Assembly: GCF_001194135.2 (NCBI RefSeq)
Contig: NC_068982.1
Location: 50,804,459 to 50,868,458 of the forward strand
Length of the DNA stretch: 64,000 bases
From: Octopus bimaculoides
Lineage: Eukaryota
Direction: 5' to 3'
The notes beneath the pieces are model-generated. The model was not told the DNA's origin and ran no database searches. It saw only the letters and a list, made by a program, of their open reading frames with translations. The position numbers and the translations under genes were made by a program. Of the stretch, positions 3,450 through 58,961 are shown piece after piece; position 1 is the first letter of the stretch; each line of letters opens with the position of its first letter.

Positions 3450-3513
3450 ATAACAACAATAATAATAATAATAATTATAATAATAATAAATAATAATAAT
3501 AATAATAATAATA

Positions 3514-3558
<45 letters not shown>

Positions 3559-3560
3559 TA
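3450..3560. repeat. (AAT)n directly followed by (ATT)n microsatellite
   Basis: Visible trinucleotide tracts in opposite orientation. Confidence 0.95.
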
Positions 3561-3566
3561 AATAAT

Positions 3567-3668
3567 GTTTTCAAATTTTGGCACAAGGCCAACAAGTTCG
3601 GGGTAGGAGTTAAGTCGATTACATCGACCCCAGACCCAACTGGTATTTATTTTATCGACCGAGAAAAC
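3567..3668 (-). mobile_element. SINE family A, 3' part
   Basis: ttttggcacaaggcc...gtcgattacatcgaccccag...tattttatcgacc is the reverse complement of the family A 3' module. Confidence 0.8.
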
Positions 3669-3739
3669 AAGTCAGAGAACAGGCGAACTGGTGCGGCACA
3701 CATGTCCATTGGTTGTTACAGCAATACATGAAGAGACGA

Positions 3740-4500
3740 ACACAAGTGTTGTGGCTTGAATCGTTGGTACGAAATTTTACCTTTGTCTAATCGTCACCTT
3801 TTGCGGTACAGAACGGGCAGGTGGTGGGTTTGAGTGGGGGTGAACAGCAATATGTGGTAGAATGAGGTCTGCGCGTACAGACAAATCCGGATGACTACAA
3901 AAGTCTTCAAGACTATCCCGCAATTGTACTCCCATTGTGAGAGTAATGGGGAAGGCCAGAACAGAAATCCCTGCTAGAATCACTTGGAAGTTTTGTTTCC
4001 TGAAAAAAGAAGGGTAAAGCGGAGGAAGAGGAGGGAAAAAGAGCTGCCACAAACAACAGAGATAGCAACTACAACACTCCTCGGCTATTCCAGTTGACAA
4101 ACTGATAGAAGTCCCGAGTATAGCCAGAGTCGCCTCAATGACCGATGAAGAAGCTGGTTATCAAGAAAATGAAAGGTGACCTCCTCCAAAAGCAAAGCTG
4201 AGAAGACTACAGGACAAGAAATGCCATTCTATTGTCTTGTGACAATGAGGAAAAAAATGTAGAATGCAGAGAAGTGGATAACAACCGGACCGATAAGCAA
4301 GCAAGATACATAAAAGGAGACCCCCACCGGGGACAACAGCGTCAAATACACATATACCCGAATCTCAAACGAAGATCTGACGGAGCCATAATAATACGAG
4401 ATTGTAGATGAAAAGAAACTGTTTATGGAGGAAGAGACGGTGTTTGAATGTAAAGAACGCTTGAAATACGGATTGTTGATGTTTTAAAATCCCTAATGTT
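3740..4500 (+). mobile_element. Possible highly decayed Tx1/L1-type ORF1 remnant
   Basis: Purine-rich, moderately GC-rich block with weak echoes of the 53174 ORF1 (VTFCGT.. versus VPTYLGR; ..GRP..). No intact motif. Confidence 0.25.
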
Positions 4501-4840
4501 CCATGCACACCTATAACTAAGAGAACATAAGATGCTTACATTATACAAAGCCTACATGGTTACTACTCGGAGTTTCTTCTTTCTGATCCCCAGCTGCTTG
4601 GTACTTCAGCCTCATATTCCAGAAAGTATCTGAAAGTAAGGATGTATCTGGATTATGATTTAAATATATGAAGAAGCGACAAAAGAAGGCGCATATAAAG
4701 CAATATCTGGCTTCATTAACTAAACATGTCCAAGATTCTTGTCAAGGATTTGGATGTGCAGACACCAAAATTCCTAAGCGAAGGTTGGTCACGCTCAACG
4801 CCGGATTCGATACACAGCCATAAACAATATCTATCTATTT

Positions 4841-5048
4841 AAGGCGGCGAGCTGACAGAAACGTTATCACGCCGGGCGAAATGCTTTTCGTCTGTCTTCA
4901 CGTTCCGAATTCAAATGCTGCCGGGTTCGACTTTGCCTTTCATCCTTTCAGGATCGATAAAATAAGTCCCAGCTGAACACTGGGATTGATGTAATCAACT
5001 TTTCCCCTCCCTCAAAACTGCTGGCCTTGTGCTAAAATCTGAAAGCAA
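4841..5048 (+). mobile_element. SINE family A, near full length
   Basis: aaggcggcgagctgacagaaacgtta...ttcaaatgctgccgggttcgactttgcctttcatcctttc...ggccttgtgctaaaatctgaaa; about 12 related copies in the window. Confidence 0.9.
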
Positions 5049-5175
5049 AATTCATCTATTTATCTGTTTGTACGTACACATACACACACATTGCTGTCGT
5101 TGCTGTGGCTTCCTCGACCGCCGCCACCGCAGTTGTTGCCGCGGGTGCACTTCTATCTATCTCTCTCTCTCTCTC

Positions 5176-5211
<36 letters not shown>

Positions 5212-6190
5212 NNNNNNNNNNNNNNNNNNNNNNNNNNNNNNNNNNNNNNNNNNNNNNNNNNNNNNNNNNNNNNNNNNNNNNNNNNNNNNNNNNNNNNNNN
5301 NNNNNNNNNNNNNNNNNNNNNNNNNNNNNNNNNNNNNNNNNNNNNNNNNNNNNNNNNNNNNNNNNNNNNNNNNNNNNNNNNNNNNNNNNNNNNNNNNNNN
5401 NNNNNNNNNNNNNNNNNNNNNNNNNNNNNNNNNNNNNNNNNNNNNNNNNNNNNNNNNNNNNNNNNNNNNNNNNNNNNNNNNNNNNNNNNNNNNNNNNNNN
5501 NNNNNNNNNNNNNNNNNNNNNNNNNNNNNNNNNNNNNNNNNNNNNNNNNNNNNNNNNNNNNNNNNNNNNNNNNNNNNNNNNNNNNNNNNNNNNNNNNNNN
5601 NNNNNNNNNNNNNNNNNNNNNNNNNNNNNNNNNNNNNNNNNNNNNNNNNNNNNNNNNNNNNNNNNNNNNNNNNNNNNNNNNNNNNNNNNNNNNNNNNNNN
5701 NNNNNNNNNNNNNNNNNNNNNNNNNNNNNNNNNNNNNNNNNNNNNNNNNNNNNNNNNNNNNNNNNNNNNNNNNNNNNNNNNNNNNNNNNNNNNNNNNNNN
5801 NNNNNNNNNNNNNNNNNNNNNNNNNNNNNNNNNNNNNNNNNNNNNNNNNNNNNNNNNNNNNNNNNNNNNNNNNNNNNNNNNNNNNNNNNNNNNNNNNNNN
5901 NNNNNNNNTTTTTTATGTTTGAACGGGGAAATATTTGTGTTTCAGCTAAAATAAAACAGATACCACCACCATCCCTACCGACACCAACTCCATGTCACGC
6001 GGATGTTTAAATCAAACTGTTAACTTACCGCTCCATAATATGATTGCTTTCCAAGATGTTGAATATCTGTAGTAAAGTTTCCGCCAATCCACCTTCTTTC
6101 TTATATGTATCTGTTTTGTCATTCATTGATTTGATTTTTACTGGGATGTCAGATCAAATATATCGCATTTTTTTTTAAAAACACACACAT

Positions 6191-6275
6191 ACACACACAC
6201 ATATATTCACGCACACACACATATATTCACGCACACACACATATATTCACGCACACACACATATATTCACGCACG
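6191..6275. repeat. 20-bp minisatellite (acacacacatatattcacgc) x4
   Basis: Four exact tandem units. Confidence 0.9.
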
Positions 6276-6488
6276 CACATACTCACACATAACACAACAC
6301 ACGCACACACACATACACACATACTCGTACGCACATGCAGCGTGTATATGTAGGTATGTGTATGTATGTATGTATATTGTATGTATGCATAAATATATAT
6401 ATATACTTTTATATGCATATGCATTAGTGTGTATGCATTATATTTATGCATTATGTTTATGCATTATATTTATGCATATATATATCGC

Positions 6489-6577
<89 letters not shown>

Positions 6578-7199
6578 TTATGTACATGCTGATATATAAT
6601 TATGCCTTGAAAAATGTGAAGAGCACTCAATACATAATGTAGTGCTCAAGAATATTGCGAAATAGTTGATTTATTCTATTCTTTCTCGAAGTTTCTTGCA
6701 GTAACAATAGACAAAACAACTGTTTCTCGATACATATTTATACGTATACAATGTATTTGCACTTACACACACATTTTATTATTTTTATAATGTATGTGTG
6801 TGTGTATGTATGCATTTGTGTTTATTTGTAAAATTATATAATTGTATTTCTTTTTGTACTTAAACTTCTGCTATGTATGTTTCATAATTTGTTAAGCGTA
6901 TGTTTAAACGAAGATTCTCATGTTCAAATTGTCTTTGCATATGATTCATTAACGAAAATTTATTTTATATCTTGATGTAAACAGAACGATTTATTATCAA
7001 TAATTTACTTTTAGCTTGTTCGCAATAAAGAAGTACCTACATTTCAAGGTATTTTAAAATAATTTCATCGCTACATTTCGTTGATAATATGCACGTACAA
7101 TACCAGCTTCCGTATATTGTTAATCCCGTATCTCTCATAACACGCACTAATTTACCTGCGGAAGCCTCTTAATTACCAAGGTCGCCAGACAAATACGCA

Positions 7200-7548
7200 G
7201 GAAGGTAAAGGTAAAGACCCCCTTCGGACATGAATAACCATGGGATTGCACCTAGAAAGTTACCTTCCGAGGCACAAGTCCGGGCAATGTTGTTTCATGG
7301 AAGGCCAACAGTCACCCATGCATACCAGCCTCCCCTTTCTATGCCACCGATGTTATCCAAGGGAAAAGCAAAGGTCAATACAACTTGACACAAGTGACGA
7401 CGTAACTCATTTCTACAGCTCAATGAACTGGAGCAACGTGAAATAAAATGTCTTGCTCAAGAACACAACACACAGGCTGATCCGGGAATCGAACTCGTTA
7501 CCTCATGATTGTGAGCCCGACTTTCTAGCCACTGAGTCATCCCCCTTC
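7200..7548 (-). mobile_element. SINE family C (tRNA head, CORE/Meta-like middle, distinct tail ending ggggtctttacctttacc)
   Basis: Reverse complement aligns along its length with 25262-25575; B box GTTCGATTCCC; tgtgttcttgagcaagaca module. Confidence 0.9.
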
Positions 7549-29502: not shown

Positions 29503-29570
29503 TTGTGAGAACATTAGTTCCTTTTACTTTTCATCTATCAATAAAAGGTAGTTATATATTTATTATGTCT

Positions 29571-29765
29571 AAGGAGGCAAGCTGGCAGAATCATTAGCAC
29601 GCCGGGCGAAATGTTTAGGTGCGTTTCACCCGTCTTTACGTTCTCAGTTCAAATTCCGCTGGGGTCAACTTTGCCCATCATCCTTTCGGGTCGATAAGAC
29701 AGATACCAGTTGAGTATTGGAGTCGATTTAATCAACTTAGCCCCTCCTTCTAAATTGCTGATCTT
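29571..29765 (+). mobile_element. SINE family A
   Basis: aaggaggcaagctggcagaatcattagcacgccgggcgaaatg...gttcaaattccgc...ctaaattgctgatctt. Confidence 0.88.
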
Positions 29766-34724: not shown

Positions 34725-34902
34725 TGACTCGATTACATCGACCCCGGAGTTCACTTGGTACTTATTTTATCGACCCCGAAACGACCCTGAAACGATGAAA
34801 AAAAGTCGACGTCGGTGGAATTTGAACTCAGAACGTAAAGACGAATGAAATGCTGCTAAGCATTTGCCCGGCATGCTAACGAGTTTGCCAACTCGCCGCC
34901 TT
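34725..34902 (-). mobile_element. SINE family A
   Basis: gattacatcgacccc...gtcgacgtcggtggaatttgaactcagaacgtaaagac...ttgccaactcgccgcctt. Confidence 0.88.
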
Positions 34903-34924
34903 AGTGTCAGATTCATATAAACAG

Positions 34925-37926: not shown

Positions 37927-37974
37927 CATACATATATATGATATTAAGTAAGTAAGTTAACAGAATCATTTGCA

Positions 37975-38162
37975 CGCCAGAGTAAATGCCTAGCAGCATT
38001 TCGTCCGTCATTAAGTTCTGAGTTCTAATTTCGCCGAGATCAACTTTACCTTTCATCATTTCTGGGTTGATAAAATAAGTAACAATTGAGCACTGGGGTC
38101 GATGTAATCGACTTTTACTATATTCCCGAAATTGCTAGCCTTGTGCCAAAATTTGAAACCAG
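37975..38162 (+). mobile_element. SINE family A
   Basis: gttctgagttctaatttcgccgagatcaactttacctttcatc...gcactggggtcgatgtaatcgac...gccttgtgccaaaatttgaaacc. Confidence 0.85.
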
Positions 38163-38309
38163 TATAATATGTGTGTGTGTGTGTGTGTATCTCCCTTTTA
38201 TCAAACCTCTTTTTATATTATCTCCCTTTCTTTGAATTTTTTTTCTAGTCTTTCGCCGTGTTGGACCGCTGAACACTACAAGTTTTTTTCATTCTCTTTC
38301 TGTTTATTT

Positions 38310-44547: not shown

Positions 44548-45079
44548 GTTAATCAAATTCACTCATAACGCATTAGTCTTCCTGACGCTCAAGTTGACGC
44601 ACCGCGAGACTGATCCCAGAACTATGTGGTTAGAAAACAAAATTTTAGCATACAACTACACACACATATACAAATATTATTTGATTTGAAAACGTAAATT
44701 GACCTAGGTACAAAATTTCCATTTCTTGCAACAGATATCTGTGCCAAAAAAAAATAAATAAAAAATAAAATAAAATAAAACATCCAAAAGCGCTGGATCG
44801 AGATATCCAACGGTATATGGAATAAAGATTATTTTCCACACCAAACTGTCACTTGCTGGCATCTTATGTTGAAAGACAACTTTTAGATTGATTCTACGGC
44901 CATTCATTTATTTATTTATTTGCAAATGTTATTTATCTGTAACATTTTTTGCACCCAGTCCAAATAATTATCTGGTTGCTTTACTTCCCCCAAACATTCA
45001 GCTTTTTTTCTGGTTACTATTCTTATTCTATATTTATTAAGCTTTTCCCTATATTTTTCAGTCGATAAACACAAGCCAC

Positions 45080-45308
45080 AAGGCGGCGAGCTGGCAGGAT
45101 CGTTGCCGCGCCAGGAAAAATGGTTATCGGTTTTTCGTCCCTCTTTACTTTCTGAGTTCAAATTCCGCTGAGGTTAGCTTTGCCTTTCATCCCGTTCAGG
45201 ATCCGATAAAGTAAGTACCAGTCGAGCACTATGGTCGATGTAATCGGCTAGTCCCCTCCTCCGAAATTTCAAGCCTTGTACGTATAGTAGAAAGGATTAT
45301 TATTATTA
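45080..45308 (+). mobile_element. SINE family A, full length with (ATT)n tail
   Basis: aaggcggcgagctggcaggatcgtt...ttctgagttcaaattccgctgagg...gtagaaaggattattattattatt. Confidence 0.92.
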
Positions 45309-45779
45309 CTATTTATGTGATGACTTCTAATCTTAATATATTTTCATGTTTCGACTAATTAAAATATCACTAATATGAAGCACTTCATTATGCTAATTAG
45401 TTAATTTATTAAAACCTTATAAAACGGCTTCTTTTCAGAGAACGAAATAATTTAGGCCTGGACTCGTGAAAAGATAAATATAGATACTTTACGATGGAGT
45501 ACTGCTCATTTCAGAAATGACATATAAATCTTTATAAACTAAATATTAAATCACATTGAAGAGAAATTAATCGACTATATATACCTCTGTGTGTGTGTGT
45601 GTGTGTGTGTAATTACCATCTAACTACAGGTACTATTCTGTTAATATGTCTTCTCGCCTTCGTCACCTCGTCGAAATCTCTCTTCCCTCTTTCGCTTTCT
45701 CTCCTAACATTTAGAAACATTCTATGTATTAAATAACTGAGTAAACCACTAACCTACAAGCAAAAACTGAAATATTCAG

Positions 45780-46085: not shown

Positions 46086-47824
46086 GCGCATCAAATTTTC
46101 AGTACATTCTCATTTTATTTTATATCAGGTATTTTGTGAAGAATAGTATCGTTAATTATAAGTTTCCAAGGGGCCAATTATTCTGATATTATATGCAATT
46201 ATTCTGATGATTACAACCAAATATTATAAAACATGAAAATTTTATTAATAGTATTGAACTATATAAATTGTGGATCAAACTTGGTTTACAAAAATTATTA
46301 ATTTGCAGAATATAAACGCAATAAGAATCTTTGGAAATTAGCCATCACGTTCGTTATTTTCCATAACTGCTTTTATTCAGCTAAATTTTTCAGGAAAATA
46401 AAAAGACATTTGAAATTTGCACATCGTACCTTTGTATTGAAATTTAGTGGTATTAACAGTGATGAAAATAGTCCTTGAATACCATTTTTCCAGTAATAAC
46501 TATTATTATCATAAAAGCCAAATTGAAAAGAGTTGTTCATTGAATCGTGTGAAGAAAAGACGAAAAAAAAAAAACCATTGTTTTGTGCCAGATTTCGAAT
46601 TGATAATGGCATTCTGCTTTTTTTTTTTTAATGTTAGAAAGGAAATAAAAAGGAAAAATTTAACATCTGGGTCAATATTTAACTGAAAACACCAAAACAC
46701 TACGCAAATTTGACACCTTGAAATAATAATAGAAAAAAATGACACTGAATTTGTCAAGTAATTGCTTCTATGAACTACATAATAGCTAAGGTTGAGTGAC
46801 CTCTGAATGACTTCCTGTTTCTTGTTAACTAACAAAGGTTAAAGTAGGCTAGGAAAAATAATTTGATGGTCTATTTACAAGACGATGGAGTGTCTTTATC
46901 TATGTGATTCAATATAATACTGCTTTTTCTATCTTTTTAAAGAAATTGAAAGTTGAAATATTTGATAAATGTTTTGCAAACTTTCTTTGAGAAACTTGTA
47001 TCCATCGGCAGTAACATGACACTTGTCACTCTATCTTAAGAATTTCTAATCCCAATTTTTGTCAGTTATGTCAAAAACTACTGAATCAATTTTCTTCAAA
47101 CTTCTAGAAATTCAGATGCAGTATATTTTAAAAGACTGAGCATGTCTGGCGTAGAAAGCTCAATATGTAGTTTTTGTATTTACTTTCCCAAGATGAGTAA
47201 TACAATTTTTTGATGTAACTGGGTTTATATTGCGCCAAAAACTAAATCATTATATCTTGGTTACAGGATATTTGGGAACAAACCATTTATTATACGATAT
47301 TAGTAGCTAATATCACAGCAAAATATTGATTAAGTTGTTAGTCTTCGAGTTAATCTGAAAGCAGATGTAACATTTCCTTTCGTTATGGGGTTTCATAGAC
47401 ACAAAACAGAGAATCATTCTAACGCATGTACAGACGTCAGCAAACACAAATATATTCATTATATACTTACGGTAGAAAGATTGGATTTATCTTCAGCAGG
47501 CTCCAATATTAGTCTTTACAACCTTAATTTGAAAGCTCTTTGGTTTGCCTAGTGTTGAAATACTCTGGCCATTAGGCTGTATGTGAAGTCTTCTGCACAG
47601 TTGCGATGCGATTTATAAATTTCCGTGATTGTGTATAGTGAAAGACCTCTAACTGAGCAAACCATCAATTTATCAAGGTTTGGTGGACACTTTTTTTTCT
47701 TTATAATTTACGTCTTGAACACTAGTGCCGAGCACGCGTTTCTTTTCATACACATTTTTCTAACAAAATATTCATACAGTATGCATAATGCTGCTATGAT
47801 AATAATAACAACAACAACAACAAC

Positions 47825-47854
<30 letters not shown>

Positions 47855-47855
<1 letters not shown>

Positions 47856-48403
47856 CCATGATGCTGTACCAGACACTGGCTCTCATGGCTTCAGATCTTA
47901 ACTGATTAGAAGTGTTATCATGTACATGTTTTGTCTTGGTATAAAAGATGGGCTAATATTCTGTTTAATACCATAGCAAATATTCTGCTCAAATATTCTA
48001 CCTGTCGTTTGTTTGATCTTAATCAGTTAAGCTGACGATATGTGCATCTTTGATCACGAGAAGTAGTGAGGAAGCATCATAACCATGTGTTGGGAAGAAT
48101 TCTTTGGGTTCTGAATAATTCACCTCTGGAAACATGGGTGTTTCATTCAACATCCATAAACAACCATTATTCAGGGATCTTTAGACTGGGATGGGCTACT
48201 CGACCTGTAAAAAATGTTAACTGGGACCCACATTCAAGGTCATGTGTTGTTTATCTTGATATGAGATCACCATGTCACGCACATATGGTTGTGGTGCATG
48301 TACCTGGTGTACCCTTATCAGACGGGTAGTCATGATGGGTATACTGGGCTTCGTATATTTTCACCCCAGTGTCACTTTGATTCGTATGCACTGCTTTCTC
48401 ATT
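47855..48403 (+). mobile_element. Family F: ~550-bp non-coding element flanked on both sides by (AAT)n
   Basis: Aligns along its length with the reverse complement of 51371-51930; (AAC)n(AAT)n upstream and (AAT)n downstream; no tRNA A/B box or ORF seen. Confidence 0.88.
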
Positions 48404-48414
48404 AAATAATGATG

Positions 48415-48446
<32 letters not shown>

Positions 48447-48574
48447 TTCTTTAGTAACCACAAGAAAAACATGGACATTACAGGAAAAAACAAAGAACGT
48501 TTGTGTGTGTGTGTGTGTGTGTTGTGGGGGTTTTGCATGTAAACAAGATCAACAATAATAATAACAATAATTTT

Positions 48575-48770
48575 TCTATCAAAGGGACACAGCTTGAAAA
48601 TTTGGGGAGGGAGCTAGAAGATTACATCGACCCAGTGTTCAATCGATACTTATTTTATCGACTCACCTCCATTCCAAAAAGATGAAAAACAAAGTTGATC
48701 TTGACAGAATTTGAACTCAGAACATAATGATTTGAAAGAAACGCCACTAAGCATTTAAGCCGATGCGCCG
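48575..48770 (-). mobile_element. SINE family A
   Basis: gattacatcgacccagtg...cttattttatcgac...gaatttgaactcagaac...ccactaagcattt. Confidence 0.8.
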
Positions 48771-50118: not shown

Positions 50119-50190
50119 TATTATGCACTTTATTGTGATTTGTTATAATAATAATAATGGAACACCCCTCCCACGCGACGAGTGGTGTTC

Positions 50191-50231
<41 letters not shown>

Positions 50232-51053: not shown

Positions 51054-51338
51054 AAAGGAAAAATGTAACTATATTTGAAAAGTTACTGGACTTCAGTCAT
51101 CTCTATTATTTCTACAGAAGCAACGCTTCTAAATAGATAAGTGCTGAAGATGGAGAGATTGAAATTCAACTAAAATTAATCAGCTGTCATCACCTAAGAA
51201 GATCACGGCTGCTTAAAGTTGTATATTTTTCATAGTAGTACATTAGACATAATTTGAAGCTTGCTATCAGTTTAGGTGTTATTAAAACGGCTGCCCTGAT
51301 GGAAAAATTTGAAACTATAATTACTATTATTATAATCC

Positions 51339-51370
<32 letters not shown>

Positions 51371-51930
51371 GAGTGAGAGAGCAGCGCATGCCATCAAAGT
51401 GACACTGGGGTAAAATATACGAAGCCCAGTATACTTATCATGACTACCCGTCTGGTAAGGGTACACCAGGCACCAGGCATATGCATCACAACCATATGTG
51501 CGCTACATGGTCATCTTATATCAAGATAAACAGCGCATGACCTTGCTGGTAGGGTGCAGTCAGAAGTTTCTTCAGGTCGATAAGTCCATCCCACTCAAAA
51601 GGTCCCTGAATAAGGTCTGTTTAAGGATGATGAATGAAACACCCATGTTTCCAGAGGTGAATTATTCAAACCCCAATTAATTCCTCTCAACACGTGGCTA
51701 TAACGTTCCCCTACAACTTCTGCTCGTGATCAGAGATGCACATATCGTCAGCCACCAAGAGACATTCTGAACTGGTTAAAGTCAAGCAACTGAGAAGCAA
51801 ATCTGTGGTATTGAGCAGAATATTTGCTTTGGACCATTTTTTATACGAAGGCAAAACATGTACATGATAACAGTTCCAATCAGTTAAGATCAGAAGCCAT
51901 GAGAGCCAGTGCCTGGTACTACATCAGGGC
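51371..51930 (-). mobile_element. Family F second copy, between (ATT)n tracts
   Basis: Reverse complement starts gccctgatgtagtaccaggcactggctctcatggcttctgatc and ends gtcactttgatggcatgcgctgctctctcactc-aataataat. Confidence 0.88.
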
Positions 51931-51967
<37 letters not shown>

Positions 51968-51991
51968 GTTGTTGTTGTTGTTGTTGTTGTT

Positions 51992-52749
51992 ATCATTTAG
52001 AGTTTCCTTTCATTATAACTTTATTTCAGCTGCCTTAGTACTGGGCATCCTCCGGAGGCCAAGAGTAGCAACAGCACATTTGTTTCGCTATGCATGCTAA
52101 AATTATCACCACGTTTATTCCATATTAGATGGAGAATGCTTTCCGTAAAATATGGGCTGTACCTATCAAGGTTATCTTTTGTATTTCACAGAGATTGGAG
52201 TTACCAGAGAGTTGCTTAATATACTTCTCAGCTCTCTTCTTTATCATTCCCAATGCACCAATTACTGCTTGTATTATTGTAGTACTAAGCTTCCACATTT
52301 TTGTGATTTCAATTTGCAGATCTTTATAGTGAGAAAGCTTTTCGTATTCCTTTCTTGAGACATTTTGATCTTGTGGGACAAACATATCTATTAACAAACA
52401 AGTTCTTCAGTTGTAGTCCTTCATCACAATGTCTGGTCGATTGGAGTCAATTTTTCTGTCTCTTTGTATTGGGAAGTTCCTAAGGATAATGACGGCCTCG
52501 CCATTCACTACATCCTCTAGATGGTGCCTATACCACTTATCACGGGATTTAATTTTGTAGTATTTACAAGCATTCCAGTGGATGTGCTGCCCTAGTCTGT
52601 CATGTCTTATGAGGTACTATTTTTCAGCCAGGCAGCCAGAAACAACATGATCAATTGTCTCTGTGAATTTTCCACAAATTCTACACGAGGGATCAGATTC
52701 ATCGTTAAGGACGTTTGCATAGTAGTTTCTGGCTGGTAAGCTCTCATGA
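51992..52749 (-). mobile_element. 5'-truncated R4/Dong-like non-LTR retrotransposon (CCHC finger, restriction-like endonuclease, 3' UTR)
   Basis: Single frame with 2 stops: SLPARNY..CRICGKFTETIDHVVSGC..RHD..HIHW..NRPDIVMKD..LIDMFVPQDQNVSRKEYEKLSHYKDL..VIGALG..GTAHILRK; (AAT)n on both sides. Confidence 0.9.
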
Positions 52750-52763
52750 TTATTATAATTATA

Positions 52764-52796
<33 letters not shown>

Positions 52797-52904: not shown

Positions 52905-54790
52905 CATTTGTGTGGCCAGGCCGACTGGGCTCTTGCTGAGCTGAGCGGAGCGGGAGAAGAGTGTTAGCTCTTCCTTTCTTTTTGACGTCCCCCTCTGCTG
53001 TCGGAAAACAGCCAAAAATGTTTTAAATTAATTGTTTCCGCCCTCTCCGCGCCTTAAAAGGCAAAGAGAGGGACGACCAAAGTCTTGCTAGCACGTGCCA
53101 CGCTGAGCAACAGAAGGAAAAAGAAGAAAAGAAACGCGAGATAGAAGAGAAAAAGAGCAAAGAAATTCAGCTAATGGACGCTGCTAAAGTCGGAACACCT
53201 GTGAATCCAAGCCCTCCTACTACCACCACTAACACTAACATATTGAACACTCAACAACAACAACCCAATACATTAAACAGCAGAGGTTTTGCTTCAAGCG
53301 CAAAGCTTAGAAATGAATTCATTAATGTTTCTGTAGAATTTCTCAAAGGCTACAGAAACATGTTAAAAAGAAAAACGGTGTTTTGATAAACACACCTTTA
53401 GAGGTTATAGACAATACAAACAAACGTACCATAGTGTACAAAACTATATCTTTAAAAAATAGACGTTTACAAACTGCTAGAAAGCAAAGAGTTGAAAAAA
53501 TGCTTGCAACCTATTTGGAAAGACGTAACATATCTGTCGATAAGAAATATAGCACAACTGAAGTCAGATATGCTACAGAAAACATAGCAAAACAACACTC
53601 AACAGTCCAGCTGAGAAACAGTGAACTTGTCCTAGTTCCAACATACTTAGGACGGCGCGTCGCCAGGATAAAAATACTGGAGATACCACCAGAAATGAAC
53701 GCTTGCTGAATTGTCGCAGCCGTCCTCCACGACTTGAAAAATAAAATTATAATCAACCAAGTCAAGAAACAAGGAAAGAACAAATGGACTGGTCAGGAAT
53801 TGCAAATAATGGTCCAAATAAACCAAGACGTTTTGGAAAAAATTCCTGACTAACTCAGCCTTCCAGATGATACTATGCTGAACGTCACAGTTGAGGACAG
53901 AAGGTCAAGATGTTATCAATGCGGACAGAATAACCACCTGAAAGCCTTCTTCCGGCAACTAAAACAGGAGGGCACTACCACCTTGATACAAGCATCATCC
54001 ACACCACAACTGAAGCAACCCTAACTACAGAAGCAACCCCAACAACCAAACCCACCGAAAAGAAAGCAGAGAGGGCTCCAGCAAACAACTGCACGAGAGA
54101 CAACAATGCCAACAACAGAGGAGCTGACCACATGCACCACCACAGGGCCTACAAAAACACCACCAACGCAGCTCTTGCCAGAGGAACAAAAAGCATCAGC
54201 AAATTTCGACCCACTGGATCTACCCCTTCCCGATTTTGACTCATCAGACATGTCGTGCAGTGAGGCCGACAGAATTGAGGGGACAGAAGTCAGACGTAAA
54301 AGACTAGGAAAAAGGCACAGCAGTACACCAACAAATAAACGAGTTGTACCCCCACCCAAAAGCATCGCAAATCACCTGAAAAAATAACAAAAACAACACA
54401 CCAACACCCACGCTTCCAATACCTTCACCAACACCACAGACACAACCAACAGTACAAGGCACAAGAGGGTCAACACAAAAAGGAAACGAAAATAACACTG
54501 TGAAAAAATACGAGGAAGTAACGAGAGCAAAGATTAATCCGGAAAATCGGTGGCCCTGCAGCTCGGCACCTGAAGAGGCTGATCCATGCCAACCGACAGG
54601 GTTTTTTAAGGACGTTGGACGGTCGGGCCCGTAAAATTGCTCTGGATCTGGTTCGGACGGGACCTCCAACTGGAGAAGAACTGGAGCGAGGTGAAGAGAA
54701 AGGTAGCCAGTCTCACTCAGAAATGGGCCGAGAGGAAGCGATTCTTGAAAGGTCGAGCCGAGGTGGTGAACACATATGTCACCTCAGTCA
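52905..54790 (+). mobile_element. Tx1/L1-clade LINE: 5' UTR, disrupted ORF1 (RRM-like region, CCHC knuckle), fused by deletion to an RT C-terminal fragment
   Basis: ORF1 from 53174: PTYLGRRVARIKILEIPPE, VTVEDRRSRCYQCGQNNHLKAF. From about 54500: KKYEEVTRAKINP..KS.., VKLLWIWFGRDLQLEKNWSEVKRKV..W.ERKRFLKGRAEVVNTYV. Confidence 0.82.
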
Positions 54791-56900: not shown

Positions 56901-58099
56901 TATAAAAGTAAATTTTATGTGGAAAAAGTTTTAATTTAAAATTTCAATAATATAAGTACATTCAATAAAAGTTGCATTAAAAATGGATTAAAAAAATTTG
57001 AGTTAAACAGTTATAATTTTTGATTAACAAAAATGTATCTTACGATACATTTTTTGAAGCTTTAAATTCACAAGACTATCTTAAAATACAGCGAATTCAG
57101 AGTTAAATAATTTCAGGTTGGTGACATTCTTCAGATTGATAAATTGCAAACTAGTGTTTGTGTCGTAAAAATACAGCATTTTTTATTAATTATAGAGAAT
57201 AATTAGAAAGTCCATTTTTCCGTGCGGTTTCTTGATAGTCGCTTAGTATTTATTTATATACTTGATTCCTAATTTGTGTAATTTTTGTACTCTGTTGCAT
57301 CTAATTTTCTTTCGCATCCTTTATTCATCTCATAGTACTCACTCTCTCAGTAAATATCTCTTTCATTAGTTTTATCACAGTCTTAATCTCTCTCTTTTAA
57401 AGAAACTTAAAAGTAGTCCACCCTGTACATAGTTCGTTATTATGCTAGAAATAGTAGAGATCATGTGGGTATAGCCTTTAGCATACAAACCAGTCATAAA
57501 TAGCAAATTCACTTGTGATTTGTTTTCTTTGGGGCTTTTTTAGTGAATTCAGATTTCCCTACTTCATTCAGTTGACCTCCCGGTAACTTGAAATCATGTT
57601 AATATTAAAGAGAGGCAAGGATTTCCCTCGGGGGGTAATTTGAAATCGATTTCGGATTACCCTATCAAGTCTTTCCCCAAATGTTCGTTGAATTTGTGGC
57701 TAATATAGTGTTTTTCTTATGTTTTTATATACGTTGTACTCGTGAGTAAATCATAGAGAAAGAGTTTTGAGCGTCCACTTACTTGGCTGAAGTCGAAAAT
57801 GTCGTATTTAAATTGTAATAACATAAAAGTTTTGTATAATAATGGTGTATGAATATATTTTTTGTATATAGATATATTATGCTTGCATTTAAAGTATGTG
57901 TGTATTAATAAATTTTGTTTTGTATACCATATATTTTGATCGTTAATTTGTTCTTTAAAAAAATAATACAAAAATCGTGACTCAGAATCTTTGATGTTCA
58001 AGGTGTTTTTTTAAATATATCTTTAAAATGTTAGGGTATATACTGGAAAAAAGATCGTATTCCAAAACTTACTTTTTCGGTCGGCAAAATAATATTGGT

Positions 58100-58272
58100 T
58101 TCACATTTTGGCACAAGGCCAGCAATTCCGAGGGTGAGGGGGGTAAGTCGATTACATCAACCGCATTGCTCAAATGGTACTTATTTTATCGATCTCGAAA
58201 GGGCGAAAGGCAAAGTCGGATGAAATGCCGCAAAGTATTTTGCTTGGCATGCTAATGATTCTGCCAGCCTAC
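58100..58272 (-). mobile_element. SINE family A
   Basis: ttttggcacaaggccagcaattcc..gtcgattacatc..gaaaggcaaagtcgg..gcatgctaatgattctgccagcct. Confidence 0.85.
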
Positions 58273-58961
58273 TGTGTTAGTCGATATAATAATATTAATG
58301 TATTATTAACCTAACCTATATAAAACACACAACTGCAGACGTACAAAAGATGGAAAATTATTTTTTGTCCGTTCATCATATGAACTAAGATAACACTAAC
58401 ACTGGAAATATATCGGAAATATATACACAAAGAAGAGATGAAAAGAGATATAGCGAAGGTAGTAATGTCTTACAGCTTCACAGTTTAAGATTTTACAAAA
58501 TGCCAGCAGCGAATTAAAATTAATCGTTTAGTCGAAAAGAAATTTGGAAACCACATTCTGATAAAAATGTACGTAGGTTGGGATTTAATAAAAGATTTCT
58601 AGGCAACGGAGAATTTAATACTTACCTTCCTTTAGTAAACGTTATGTAATTCCTGTTAATTAATAAGCAGCTTTCTCCATTATAGTATAGATGACACCTC
58701 CTTTCGAATGGACAGGATGCATCTTCTTTCTATCTTTATCTCTCACTCCCTCCCTCCCTCTCTGTCTGTTTCCTTTATTCTCTCTATGTAGCGGATAAAG
58801 CAAGGCAGTAAAACAAAATGGTAAAATATTGTTTTGAAAACATAAAGCATTCAAACAAAGCCTAATTGTATTTTATACATCTTCCCTGTAAGATGAATAT
58901 TAATAATACCAACGGCAACAACAACGACAACAATAAAAAAACAACAACGATAATAATGACG

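What the first reader, a model, noticed from the sequence alone, without database searches (positions are those of the whole stretch)
51340..52795. Stacked (TAA)n-targeted retroelements: AAT, Dong-like LINE, AAT, family F, AAT
On the minus strand, a 5'-truncated R4/Dong-like element (CCHC finger, NRPD..D..KE.EK restriction-like endonuclease) and a complete family F element lie in tandem and in the same orientation. Each is bounded by AAT repeats. Dong-type elements are known to target TAA repeats, and each insertion regenerates a target for the next. This looks like a self-perpetuating microsatellite-targeting system with an autonomous LINE and a hitch-hiking non-coding element.
Basis: partly seen in the sequence, partly recalled or inferred. 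Interest (0 to 1): 0.75.

Follow-up and report, generated by a model that had tools for sequence, protein, structure and literature searches.

The report
Dong-type LINE stacked in AAT repeats
A dead, front-truncated copy of a known kind of jumping gene (a Dong/R4-type LINE that lands in TAA microsatellites) lies beside a 560-base non-coding repeat inside one AAT tract of an octopus-like genome; the LINE part is ordinary, and it is unproven that the neighbour rides on it.

Summary
The layout is real. On the minus strand it reads: AAT array (52795-52749), a 5'-truncated LINE C-terminus plus 3'UTR (52748-51997), AAATGAT(AAC)8(AAT)11 (51996-51933), the 562-bp repeat F (51932-51371), and a further AAT array (51370-51316).

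The LINE fragment encodes a CCHC knuckle and a restriction-like endonuclease homologous to that of R2, by both sequence and fold. It has no reverse transcriptase left and carries two in-frame stops, so it is a fossil. Relatives fetched from other animal assemblies all end in (AAT)n. Their 5'-truncated copies abut AAT arrays and are often stacked head-to-tail. (TAA)n targeting by Dong is already published, molluscs included, and Dong-R4 LINEs are known to be abundant in octopus.

F is non-coding and has no tRNA or Rfam head. It shows no similarity to any Dong-like UTR I could obtain. I could reach only two copies, 3 kb apart and inverted. Both carry the same compound (CAA)n(TAA)n array on one side, so F's orientation, its partner LINE and even its mobility remain open.

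Stacks also grow by unequal crossing-over between arrays. The finding is a new member of a known kind, of low to moderate interest.

The parts
52749..52795 (-). AAT-type array directly abutting the truncated 5' end of the LINE fragment. It is the upstream part of the target array.
   Evidence: TRF; sequence. The homology to LINE proteins begins within about 3 nt of the array.
52125..52748 (-). 5'-truncated ORF remnant of a Dong/R4-type LINE. It holds the linker, the CCHC knuckle (CRIC...HVVSGC, 52685-52632), the RHD motif, and the RLE motifs RPD (52439-52431), LID (52394-52386) and KEYEK/HYKD (52352-52320). In-frame stops at 52619-52617 and 52409-52407; natural stop at 52127-52125. No RT is left.
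51997..52124 (-). LINE 3'UTR (about 128 nt) with a small GC hairpin motif (CCTCCGGAGG). The motif is shared in position with L001 and L004 relatives. The UTR ends ...GGAAACTCT.
51933..51996 (-). Compound array AAATGATAA(CAA)8(TAA)11 between the LINE and F1. It is either the LINE's tail/target or part of the F unit, because F2 carries the same compound array without any LINE.
51371..51932 (.). F1: a 562-bp non-coding repeat with discrete ends. Orientation not resolved.
51316..51370 (.). AAT/ATT array on the far side of F1. Read on the + strand, it follows a 31-nt match to the 3' end of the S SINE-like family.
51284..51315 (+). 31-nt fragment matching the 3' terminus of the S SINE-like family (AAAACGGCTGCCCTGATGGAAAAATTTGAAAC). 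It may be the seed of the neighbouring array.
   Evidence: score 27 against a maximum of 25 in 200 shuffles.
47796..47854 (+). Compound array ATGATAATAATAA(CAA)6(TAA)9 beside F2. There is no LINE sequence upstream of it.
47855..48404 (.). F2: the second copy of F, inverted relative to F1 and 79% identical.
48405..48446 (+). AAT array on the other side of F2.

Best explanation
The locus is a fossil pile-up inside one (TAA)n microsatellite of an octopus-like genome.

Body 1 is a dead, 5'-truncated copy of a Dong/R4-clade LINE. Elements of this kind encode a reverse transcriptase followed by a CCHC knuckle and a restriction-like endonuclease. The endonuclease nicks a (TAA)n tract. The RNA, which ends at or in UAA repeats, is copied from the nick by target-primed reverse transcription. 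Reverse transcription usually aborts early, which gives 5' truncation.

Because TAA repeats remain on both sides of the insert, the site stays a target. Further insertions stack in the same polarity, and unequal crossing-over between the flanking arrays adds or removes units.

Shown here: the domain identity, the array flanks, and the stacking in relatives. Inferred: the nicking specificity and the order of events.

Body 2 (F) is a separate, non-coding, array-bounded repeat. Its being mobilised by the Dong-type machinery is one possibility, which I put at about 0.3. It is not a finding.
For: Domain identity:
- A profile of 31 homologues hits the C-terminal CCHC+RLE region of R2 proteins in the PDB (9nl2, 9nl3, 9dou; E about 4e-6).
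- An AlphaFold model of the closest homologue (pLDDT 92.7) matches R2 structures at E 1.5e-10, TMq 0.74.
- Longer relatives carry RVT_1 upstream and no AP endonuclease.

Array flanks in relatives:
- Most relatives examined end 3'UTR->(AAT)n in sense polarity (L001, L002 x3, L005, L008, L009, and L004 only degenerately); the first copy in L010 and the L002 copy at 6086-7324 lack the tail.
- 5'-truncated copies abut AAT arrays at different truncation points: window 52748; L002 6086, 8557 and 9612; L008 6773; and the 160-bp fragment in L005.
- Two long copies start right after short TAA arrays with homologous 5' ends.

Stacks: L002 has three copies in one array, L008 has two, and L005 has a LINE plus a fragment of a second RLE family.

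Literature:
- Dong-R4 LINEs are abundant in Octopus (PMC13282606, PMC8967140, PMC9115989).
Against: - I did not place the RT in a phylogeny, and the window copy has no RT. R4/Dong-clade membership therefore rests on architecture, target and the published octopus annotation.
- One related locus (L010) has two RLE-LINE fragments adjacent with no AAT array between them.
- One copy of a second RLE family (LINE-B in L005) abuts the array in the opposite polarity.
- For F, nothing links it to the LINE except the shared repeat context.
Confidence: 0.75

Rival explanations
1. F points the other way. Its compound array is a templated 3' tail, (TTA)n(TTG)n, of the kind carried by the S SINE-like family, and F is mobilised by a different LINE, for instance an RTE type with microsatellite tails. 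The Dong fragment and F then lie tail-to-tail and simply share an array. They are not a tandem same-orientation pair.
For: - Both F copies carry the same compound block on the same side, (CAA)8(TAA)11 and (CAA)6(TAA)9. F2 has no LINE upstream of it. An inherited compound repeat is what a templated 3' tail looks like.
- S copies end in ATT/GTT-type tails, read in S sense: ATTATTGTTATTATTATTGTTG at 48550-48572...ATTGTTGTTAT at 3450, and ATTATTATTATTACTATT at 45303.
- A 31-nt S 3' end sits in the + orientation just before F1's other array.
- RTE tails with (ATT)n, (TAT)n and (TTG)n are documented (PMC2887409, PMC3747384).
Against:
- F shows no similarity to the S 3' end.
- AAC interruptions also occur in Dong-like tails elsewhere (L010, L002).
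Confidence: 0.25
2. F is not a mobile family. F1 and F2 are an old local inverted duplication of an array-bounded segment, made by recombination or template switching between AAT/ATT arrays. The Dong copy later landed in the array next to one of them.
For: - Only two copies are known. They lie 3 kb apart, inverted, and are 79% identical, with homology ending exactly at the outer edges of the arrays.
- The shared compound array is then simply inherited.
- Array-mediated duplication is seen directly in L002 against L003.
- F was found nowhere else I could search.
Against: - Octopus assemblies appear not to be in the searchable collections, so absence elsewhere says little.
- The discrete shared termini also fit a transposed unit.
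Confidence: 0.15
3. The AAT arrays are element-borne 3' tails, as in the Drosophila I element, and not a target. Arrays at 5' junctions are only the tails of whatever lies upstream.
For: - Nearly every copy has (AAT)n at its 3' end.
- Long copies have only short, degenerate TAA runs at their 5' ends.
- The I element ends in TAA repeats (PMC3747384).
Against: - The outermost 5'-truncated copies have long arrays at their 5' junction with no recognised element upstream: window 52749-52795, L002 6009-6085 and L002 8395-8556.
- A truncated copy cannot bring a 5' array with it.
- Published work shows TAA on both sides of Dong and a 5' ribozyme that cuts an upstream TAA co-transcript (PMC3774820).
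Confidence: 0.1
4. LINE plus F is one retrotransposed unit. A read-through transcript from a master Dong ran through its tail into a downstream F and was copied as a whole (3' transduction). F2 is a deeper 5' truncation of the same unit.
For: The order LINE 3'UTR - compound array - F - AAT is collinear, and F2 begins at the array edge.
Against: - F2's upstream flank has no similarity to the LINE 3'UTR, so truncation would have to fall exactly at the UTR/array boundary.
- F1 and F2 differ by 21%.
Confidence: 0.08

Closest known systems
Dong (Bombyx mori), DongAg (Anopheles gambiae), DongBg (Biomphalaria glabrata): (TAA)n-specific LINEs of the R4 clade
   Same: - Single-ORF LINE with RT followed by a CCHC knuckle and a restriction-like endonuclease.
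- (TAA)n on both sides, in sense polarity.
- Found in a mollusc.
- Frequent 5' truncation.
   Different: - The window copy is only the last 206 codons plus the 3'UTR.
- Clade placement by RT phylogeny was not done.
- No 5' end, so the Dong-type HDV-like ribozyme cannot be examined.
R2 (28S rDNA-specific RLE LINE; solved structures 8gh6, 9dou, 9nl2/3)
   Same: The C-terminal linker, CCHC knuckle and RLE fold match R2 (Foldseek E 1.5e-10, TMq 0.74; profile E about 4e-6). The presumed TPRT mechanism is the same.
   Different: - 15-20% identity.
- The target is a microsatellite, not 28S rDNA.
- The target survives insertion, so stacking is possible.
R2 SIDEs (short internally deleted, non-autonomous R2 derivatives)
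   Same: This is what F would be if it rode on Dong: a short non-coding element at the same target as the autonomous LINE.
   Different: SIDEs share the 5' ribozyme and the 3'UTR with their R2. F shares nothing detectable with any Dong-like UTR available, and no ribozyme family matches it.
RTE-type LINEs and their SINEs with microsatellite 3' tails; the I element with a (TAA)n tail
   Same: Elements that carry, and so create, tri-nucleotide arrays at their 3' ends. This is a possible origin of the arrays, and of F if F is flipped.
   Different: In these elements the array is element-borne and only at the 3' end. Here, truncated LINE copies have arrays at the 5' junction too.
Other microsatellite-specific LINEs (Waldo, Mino, Kibi, Koshi; R1 clade)
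   Same: The same strategy of living in simple repeats.
   Different: They use an AP endonuclease, belong to another clade and target other repeat units.

Membership tests
R4/Dong clade of RLE LINEs | C-terminal CCHC zinc knuckle followed by a PD-(D/E)XK restriction-like endonuclease | tested here: met
   - Motifs CX2CX8HX4C, RHD, RPD-X14-D and E..K..(H/K)Y are present in the window copy.
- Profile hit to the R2 C-termini.
- Fold match to R2.
R4/Dong clade of RLE LINEs | Reverse transcriptase upstream in the same ORF, with no AP endonuclease | tested here: inconclusive
   The window copy is truncated before the RT. Relatives L005 and L004 have RVT_1 (E 1e-19 and 3e-22) and no Exo_endo_phos hit in the N-terminal pieces.
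R4/Dong clade of RLE LINEs | Dong subtype: inserted in (TAA)n, with repeats on both junctions | tested here: met
   The window copy and six truncation events in the window and relatives. One exception is L010.
R4/Dong clade of RLE LINEs | RT-domain phylogeny groups the element with R4, Dong and Rex6 rather than with R2, NeSL, CRE or Hero | not tested
   No reference sequences of these clades were available in the tools. Support is indirect: relatives include Exaiptasia and Montipora proteins, which come from the same taxa used as R4/Dong representatives in PMC7998251. In O. vulgaris, RLE LINEs are overwhelmingly annotated as Dong-R4 (PMC13282606).
R4/Dong clade of RLE LINEs | HDV-like self-cleaving ribozyme at the 5' end | not testable with these tools
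   The window copy lacks a 5' end. No Rfam ribozyme family matched the 5' ends of L005 or L009, but the Rfam models are narrow.
SINE / SIDE-type non-autonomous partner of the LINE (for F) | 3' end (and for SIDEs the 5' end) shared with the partner LINE | tested here: not met
   Smith-Waterman scores of F1 and F2 against nine Dong-like 5' and 3' UTRs, including the window's own, are no better than shuffles (z from -2.1 to +0.6).
SINE / SIDE-type non-autonomous partner of the LINE (for F) | Pol III head (tRNA, 5S, 7SL, snRNA) or a 5' ribozyme | tested here: not met
   No ARAGORN tRNA. No Rfam match apart from repeat-driven noise.
SINE / SIDE-type non-autonomous partner of the LINE (for F) | Dispersed multi-copy family with independent insertions | tested here: inconclusive
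   Two copies 3 kb apart and inverted. None found in the protein, metagenome, prokaryote-genome or supplement searches. These searches probably do not cover octopus DNA.

The most novel reading that the evidence does not exclude
F is a genuine non-autonomous retroelement of the Dong/R4 machinery. It would be recognised through its (UAA)n tail and a structured 3' end rather than through a shared 3'UTR. It would also carry an upstream (CAA)n(TAA)n leader, because it lacks the 5' ribozyme that trims Dong transcripts. Alongside this, the ATT-type tails of abundant SINE-like elements, read on the other strand, would supply the TAA landing pads. One family's tails would then feed another family's target supply.
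Probability: 0.2. Interest if true: 0.55.

Novelty: new member of a known kind. Interest (0 to 1): 0.28.

Why it matters
The LINE part mainly confirms, in a cephalopod-like genome and in several other animal assemblies, what is already published. Dong-type elements live in TAA microsatellites. Because the target survives insertion, they pile up there.

Two small points add to that:
- Direct evidence that the piles also change by unequal exchange between the arrays.
- A hint that tails of other retroelements may seed the arrays.

If F proved to be a Dong-dependent passenger, it would, as far as I know, be the first non-autonomous partner described for this clade. It would also bear on how RLE-LINE reverse transcriptases choose templates. 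The present data do not show this.

Tried and rejected
- **Pfam on the window fragment.** Only sub-threshold zf-RVT and AKAP95 hits. This was resolved by the profile and fold searches instead.
- **More F copies.**
  - Protein search with F2's 87-aa ORF: nothing.
  - Exact-pattern scans of metagenome contigs and prokaryote genome contigs with two conserved F blocks: nothing.
  - F k-mers in the held part of the O. vulgaris transcriptome supplement: nothing.
- **F as a deletion derivative of the LINE.** No similarity to any 5' or 3' UTR.
- **Ribozyme in F.**
  - No Rfam ribozyme, tRNA or other family in F.
  - A hand-built HDV-like topology at one end of F fails the L3/P1.1 requirements, and F1 carries two uncompensated mismatches. 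I rejected it.
- **F2's upstream flank as a decayed LINE 3'UTR.** No similarity.
- **'ATGATAA' at the array edges as a signature.** Rejected, because it is a one-base variant of AAT repeats and is seen in many arrays.
- **Strand of F from RNA structure.** RNAalifold finds fully compatible structures on both strands, so the wobble-preserving changes are not evidence.
- **F as coding.** 7-16 stops in every frame.
- **P0089 loci.** These were the same locus in several samples, not independent insertions.
- **Xiong & Eickbush 1993.** Not held.

Full report
**What is there**

Read on the minus strand, the region runs in this order:
- an AAT-type array (52795-52749);
- a protein-coding remnant and its 3'UTR (52748-51997);
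- the compound array AAATGATAA(CAA)8(TAA)11 (51996-51933);
- a 562-bp body, F1 (51932-51371);
- a further AAT array that decays into ATA/ATT variants (51370-51316).

The window is AT-rich (33% GC), full of microsatellites and SINE-like repeats, and has twelve N gaps. AAT/ATT arrays make up only 1.0% of its non-N bases. The coincidence of all element ends with such arrays is therefore not chance.

**The LINE fragment**

From 52745 the minus strand reads ESLPARNYY...CRICGKFTETIDHVVSGC...RHD...NRPDIVMKDYN*RTCLLIDM...KEYEKLSHYKDL...ILRKAFSI*. There are two in-frame stops (52619-52617 and 52409-52407) and a natural stop at 52127-52125.

Pfam alone gave only sub-threshold hits. A search of the large protein collection returned 98 relatives:
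- The closest named ones are Octopus bimaculoides UniRef entries at 75-86% identity. This is why I call the genome octopus-like, which is an inference.
- Others come from Exaiptasia, Montipora and many unnamed assemblies.

A profile of 31 of these hits the C-terminal CCHC-plus-endonuclease region of R2 retrotransposon proteins in the PDB (9nl2, 9nl3, 9dou; E about 4e-6). An AlphaFold model of the closest full C-terminus (P0001; pLDDT 92.7) matches the same part of R2 structures (9dou_A E 1.5e-10, TMq 0.74; Bombyx R2 8gh6_A E 7e-7).

In longer relatives the same reading frame continues upstream into RVT_1, with no AP-endonuclease domain. The fragment is therefore the tail end of an RLE-type LINE. 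It has no reverse transcriptase left and is dead.

**Is it TAA-targeted?**

I fetched the DNA around relatives from other assemblies, all non-octopus.

Most copies run 3'UTR->(AAT)n in sense polarity (L004's tail is only a degenerate AT-rich run; the first copy in L010 and the L002 copy at 6086-7324 lack it). More telling, 5'-truncated copies, which cannot carry a 5' array of their own, abut AAT arrays at different truncation points:
- L002 at 6086, after (TAA)25;
- L002 at 8557, after a 160-bp array;
- L002 at 9612;
- L008 at 6773;
- a 160-bp fragment in L005;
- the window copy.

Two long copies (L005 and L009) begin with homologous 5' ends immediately after short TAA runs.

There are exceptions. 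L010 has two fragments adjacent with no array between them. One copy of a second, distant RLE family in L005 meets the array in the opposite polarity.

[quoted passage not shown] It also reports that Dong RNA is trimmed from an upstream TAA co-transcript by a 5' HDV-like ribozyme (PMC3774820). Dong-R4 LINEs are abundant, and some recently active, in Octopus (PMC13282606, PMC8967140, PMC9115989).

I did not run an RT phylogeny. Clade membership is therefore well supported but not proven.

**Stacking**

Same-orientation stacks in one AAT tract recur in three related loci:
- three copies in L002 (8395-10835);
- two in L008;
- a LINE followed by a fragment of another RLE family in L005.

However, the two short copies in L002 share the same truncation point and are 94% identical. 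A second assembly of the same region (L003) has only one of them. Unequal exchange between arrays therefore also builds and trims stacks.

**F**

F1 has one relative in the window, F2 (47855-48404, + strand). It is 79% identical, has the same two termini, and is also array-flanked. F has these properties:
- 7-16 stops in every frame;
- no tRNA;
- no Rfam family;
- no protein relatives;
- no match in any collection I could scan. Those collections appear not to hold octopus DNA, so this absence says little.

F shows no similarity above shuffles to nine Dong-like 5' or 3' UTRs, including the UTR next to it.

Strikingly, both F copies carry a (CAA)6-8(TAA)9-11 block on the same side, and F2 has no LINE sequence beyond it. 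That block therefore belongs with F, or the two copies share descent. Three readings remain:
The block is an inherited 5' leader.
- **(b) The opposite orientation.** The block is a templated (TTA)n(TTG)n 3' tail like those of the S SINE-like family in this window. A 31-nt 3' fragment of that family sits just before F1's other array.
- **(c) A local inverted duplication** bounded by arrays.

MFE z-scores lean weakly to (a). Consensus folding works equally well on both strands and so decides nothing.

I put 'F is mobilised by the Dong-type LINE' at about 0.3. That figure also counts the co-mobilised (read-through) rival and is wider than the specific novel reading scored at 0.2.

**Verdict**

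The LINE reading is right, but it describes a known system. The 'hitch-hiker' reading of F is an untested hypothesis with at least two serious rivals.

The decisive step is a census of F and of this LINE family in the source genome. It should compare which end truncated F copies lose, and compare F's ends with octopus Dong consensus UTRs.

Noticed in passing
window 3559-3800, 4835-5055, 29565-29765, 34730-34905, 37955-38170, 45075-45321, 48572-48760, 58085-58300: An abundant SINE-like family (S) ends ...GGCCTTGTGCCAAAATTTGAAAC. Several copies are followed, in their own sense, by ATT/GTT-type tails, for example ATTATTGTTATTATTATTGTTG at 48550-48572 and ATTATTATTATTACTATT at 45303. About a third of the AAT/ATT arrays in the window sit next to such an end, so retroelement tails may seed the TAA tracts that Dong-type elements use. 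No Rfam or tRNA match at gathering score.
   Followed up: partly
window 3450-3558: Two arrays of opposite polarity, (AAT)n then (ATT)15, abut head-to-head beside an S copy. The outer edge again carries CAA units (ATAACAACAATAAT...). The origin is not explained.
   Followed up: no
window 50138-50230: (ATA)4-5, then a 33-nt hairpin (GGAACACC...GGTGTTCC), then (ATT)13. This is a small fold-back flanked by arrays of opposite polarity.
   Followed up: no
L002 8395-9611 versus L003 8790-9615: The stack of short Dong-like copies has two units in one assembly and one in the other. The two units are 94% identical and share the same truncation point, which indicates tandem duplication or deletion through the AAT arrays.
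   Followed up: yes
L005 7011-8100 (also L006, L007): A second, distant RLE-LINE family (about 35% identical in the C-terminus) meets the AAT tract in the opposite polarity. A 160-bp 3' fragment of a related element lies in the tract in the usual polarity. Polarity with respect to the repeat is therefore not absolute.
   Followed up: partly
L005 3257-3330 and L009 2873-2920: Near-full-length relatives start with homologous 5' ends (CC[A/C]CGTGG.CT.GAA...) right after short TAA runs. Their first ORF piece begins W-T-[KR]-E-E-Y-K, reminiscent of the Myb/SANT-like N-terminus reported for R4/Dong (PMC7998251). No Rfam ribozyme hit.
   Followed up: partly
L010 3887-5400: Two divergent RLE-LINE C-terminal fragments lie adjacent with no AAT array between them. 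The second ends in (AAT)8(AAC)3(AAT)2. This is an exception to the array-at-5'-junction rule, and it shows that AAC blocks occur in Dong-like tails.
   Followed up: partly
L001 60-480: A long inverted repeat (about 60-nt arms, GGTCCGAATATACTACTATCGTCCGACGTGCG...) lies just upstream of the LINE remnant. It could be a MITE-like insertion that truncates the LINE.
   Followed up: no
window 53090-53386 (+): An open stretch (…EKKSKEIQLMDAAKVGTPVNPS…LRNEFINVSVEFLKGYRNML…) could be a host exon. It has no Pfam hit, so the stack may lie in an intron.
   Followed up: partly
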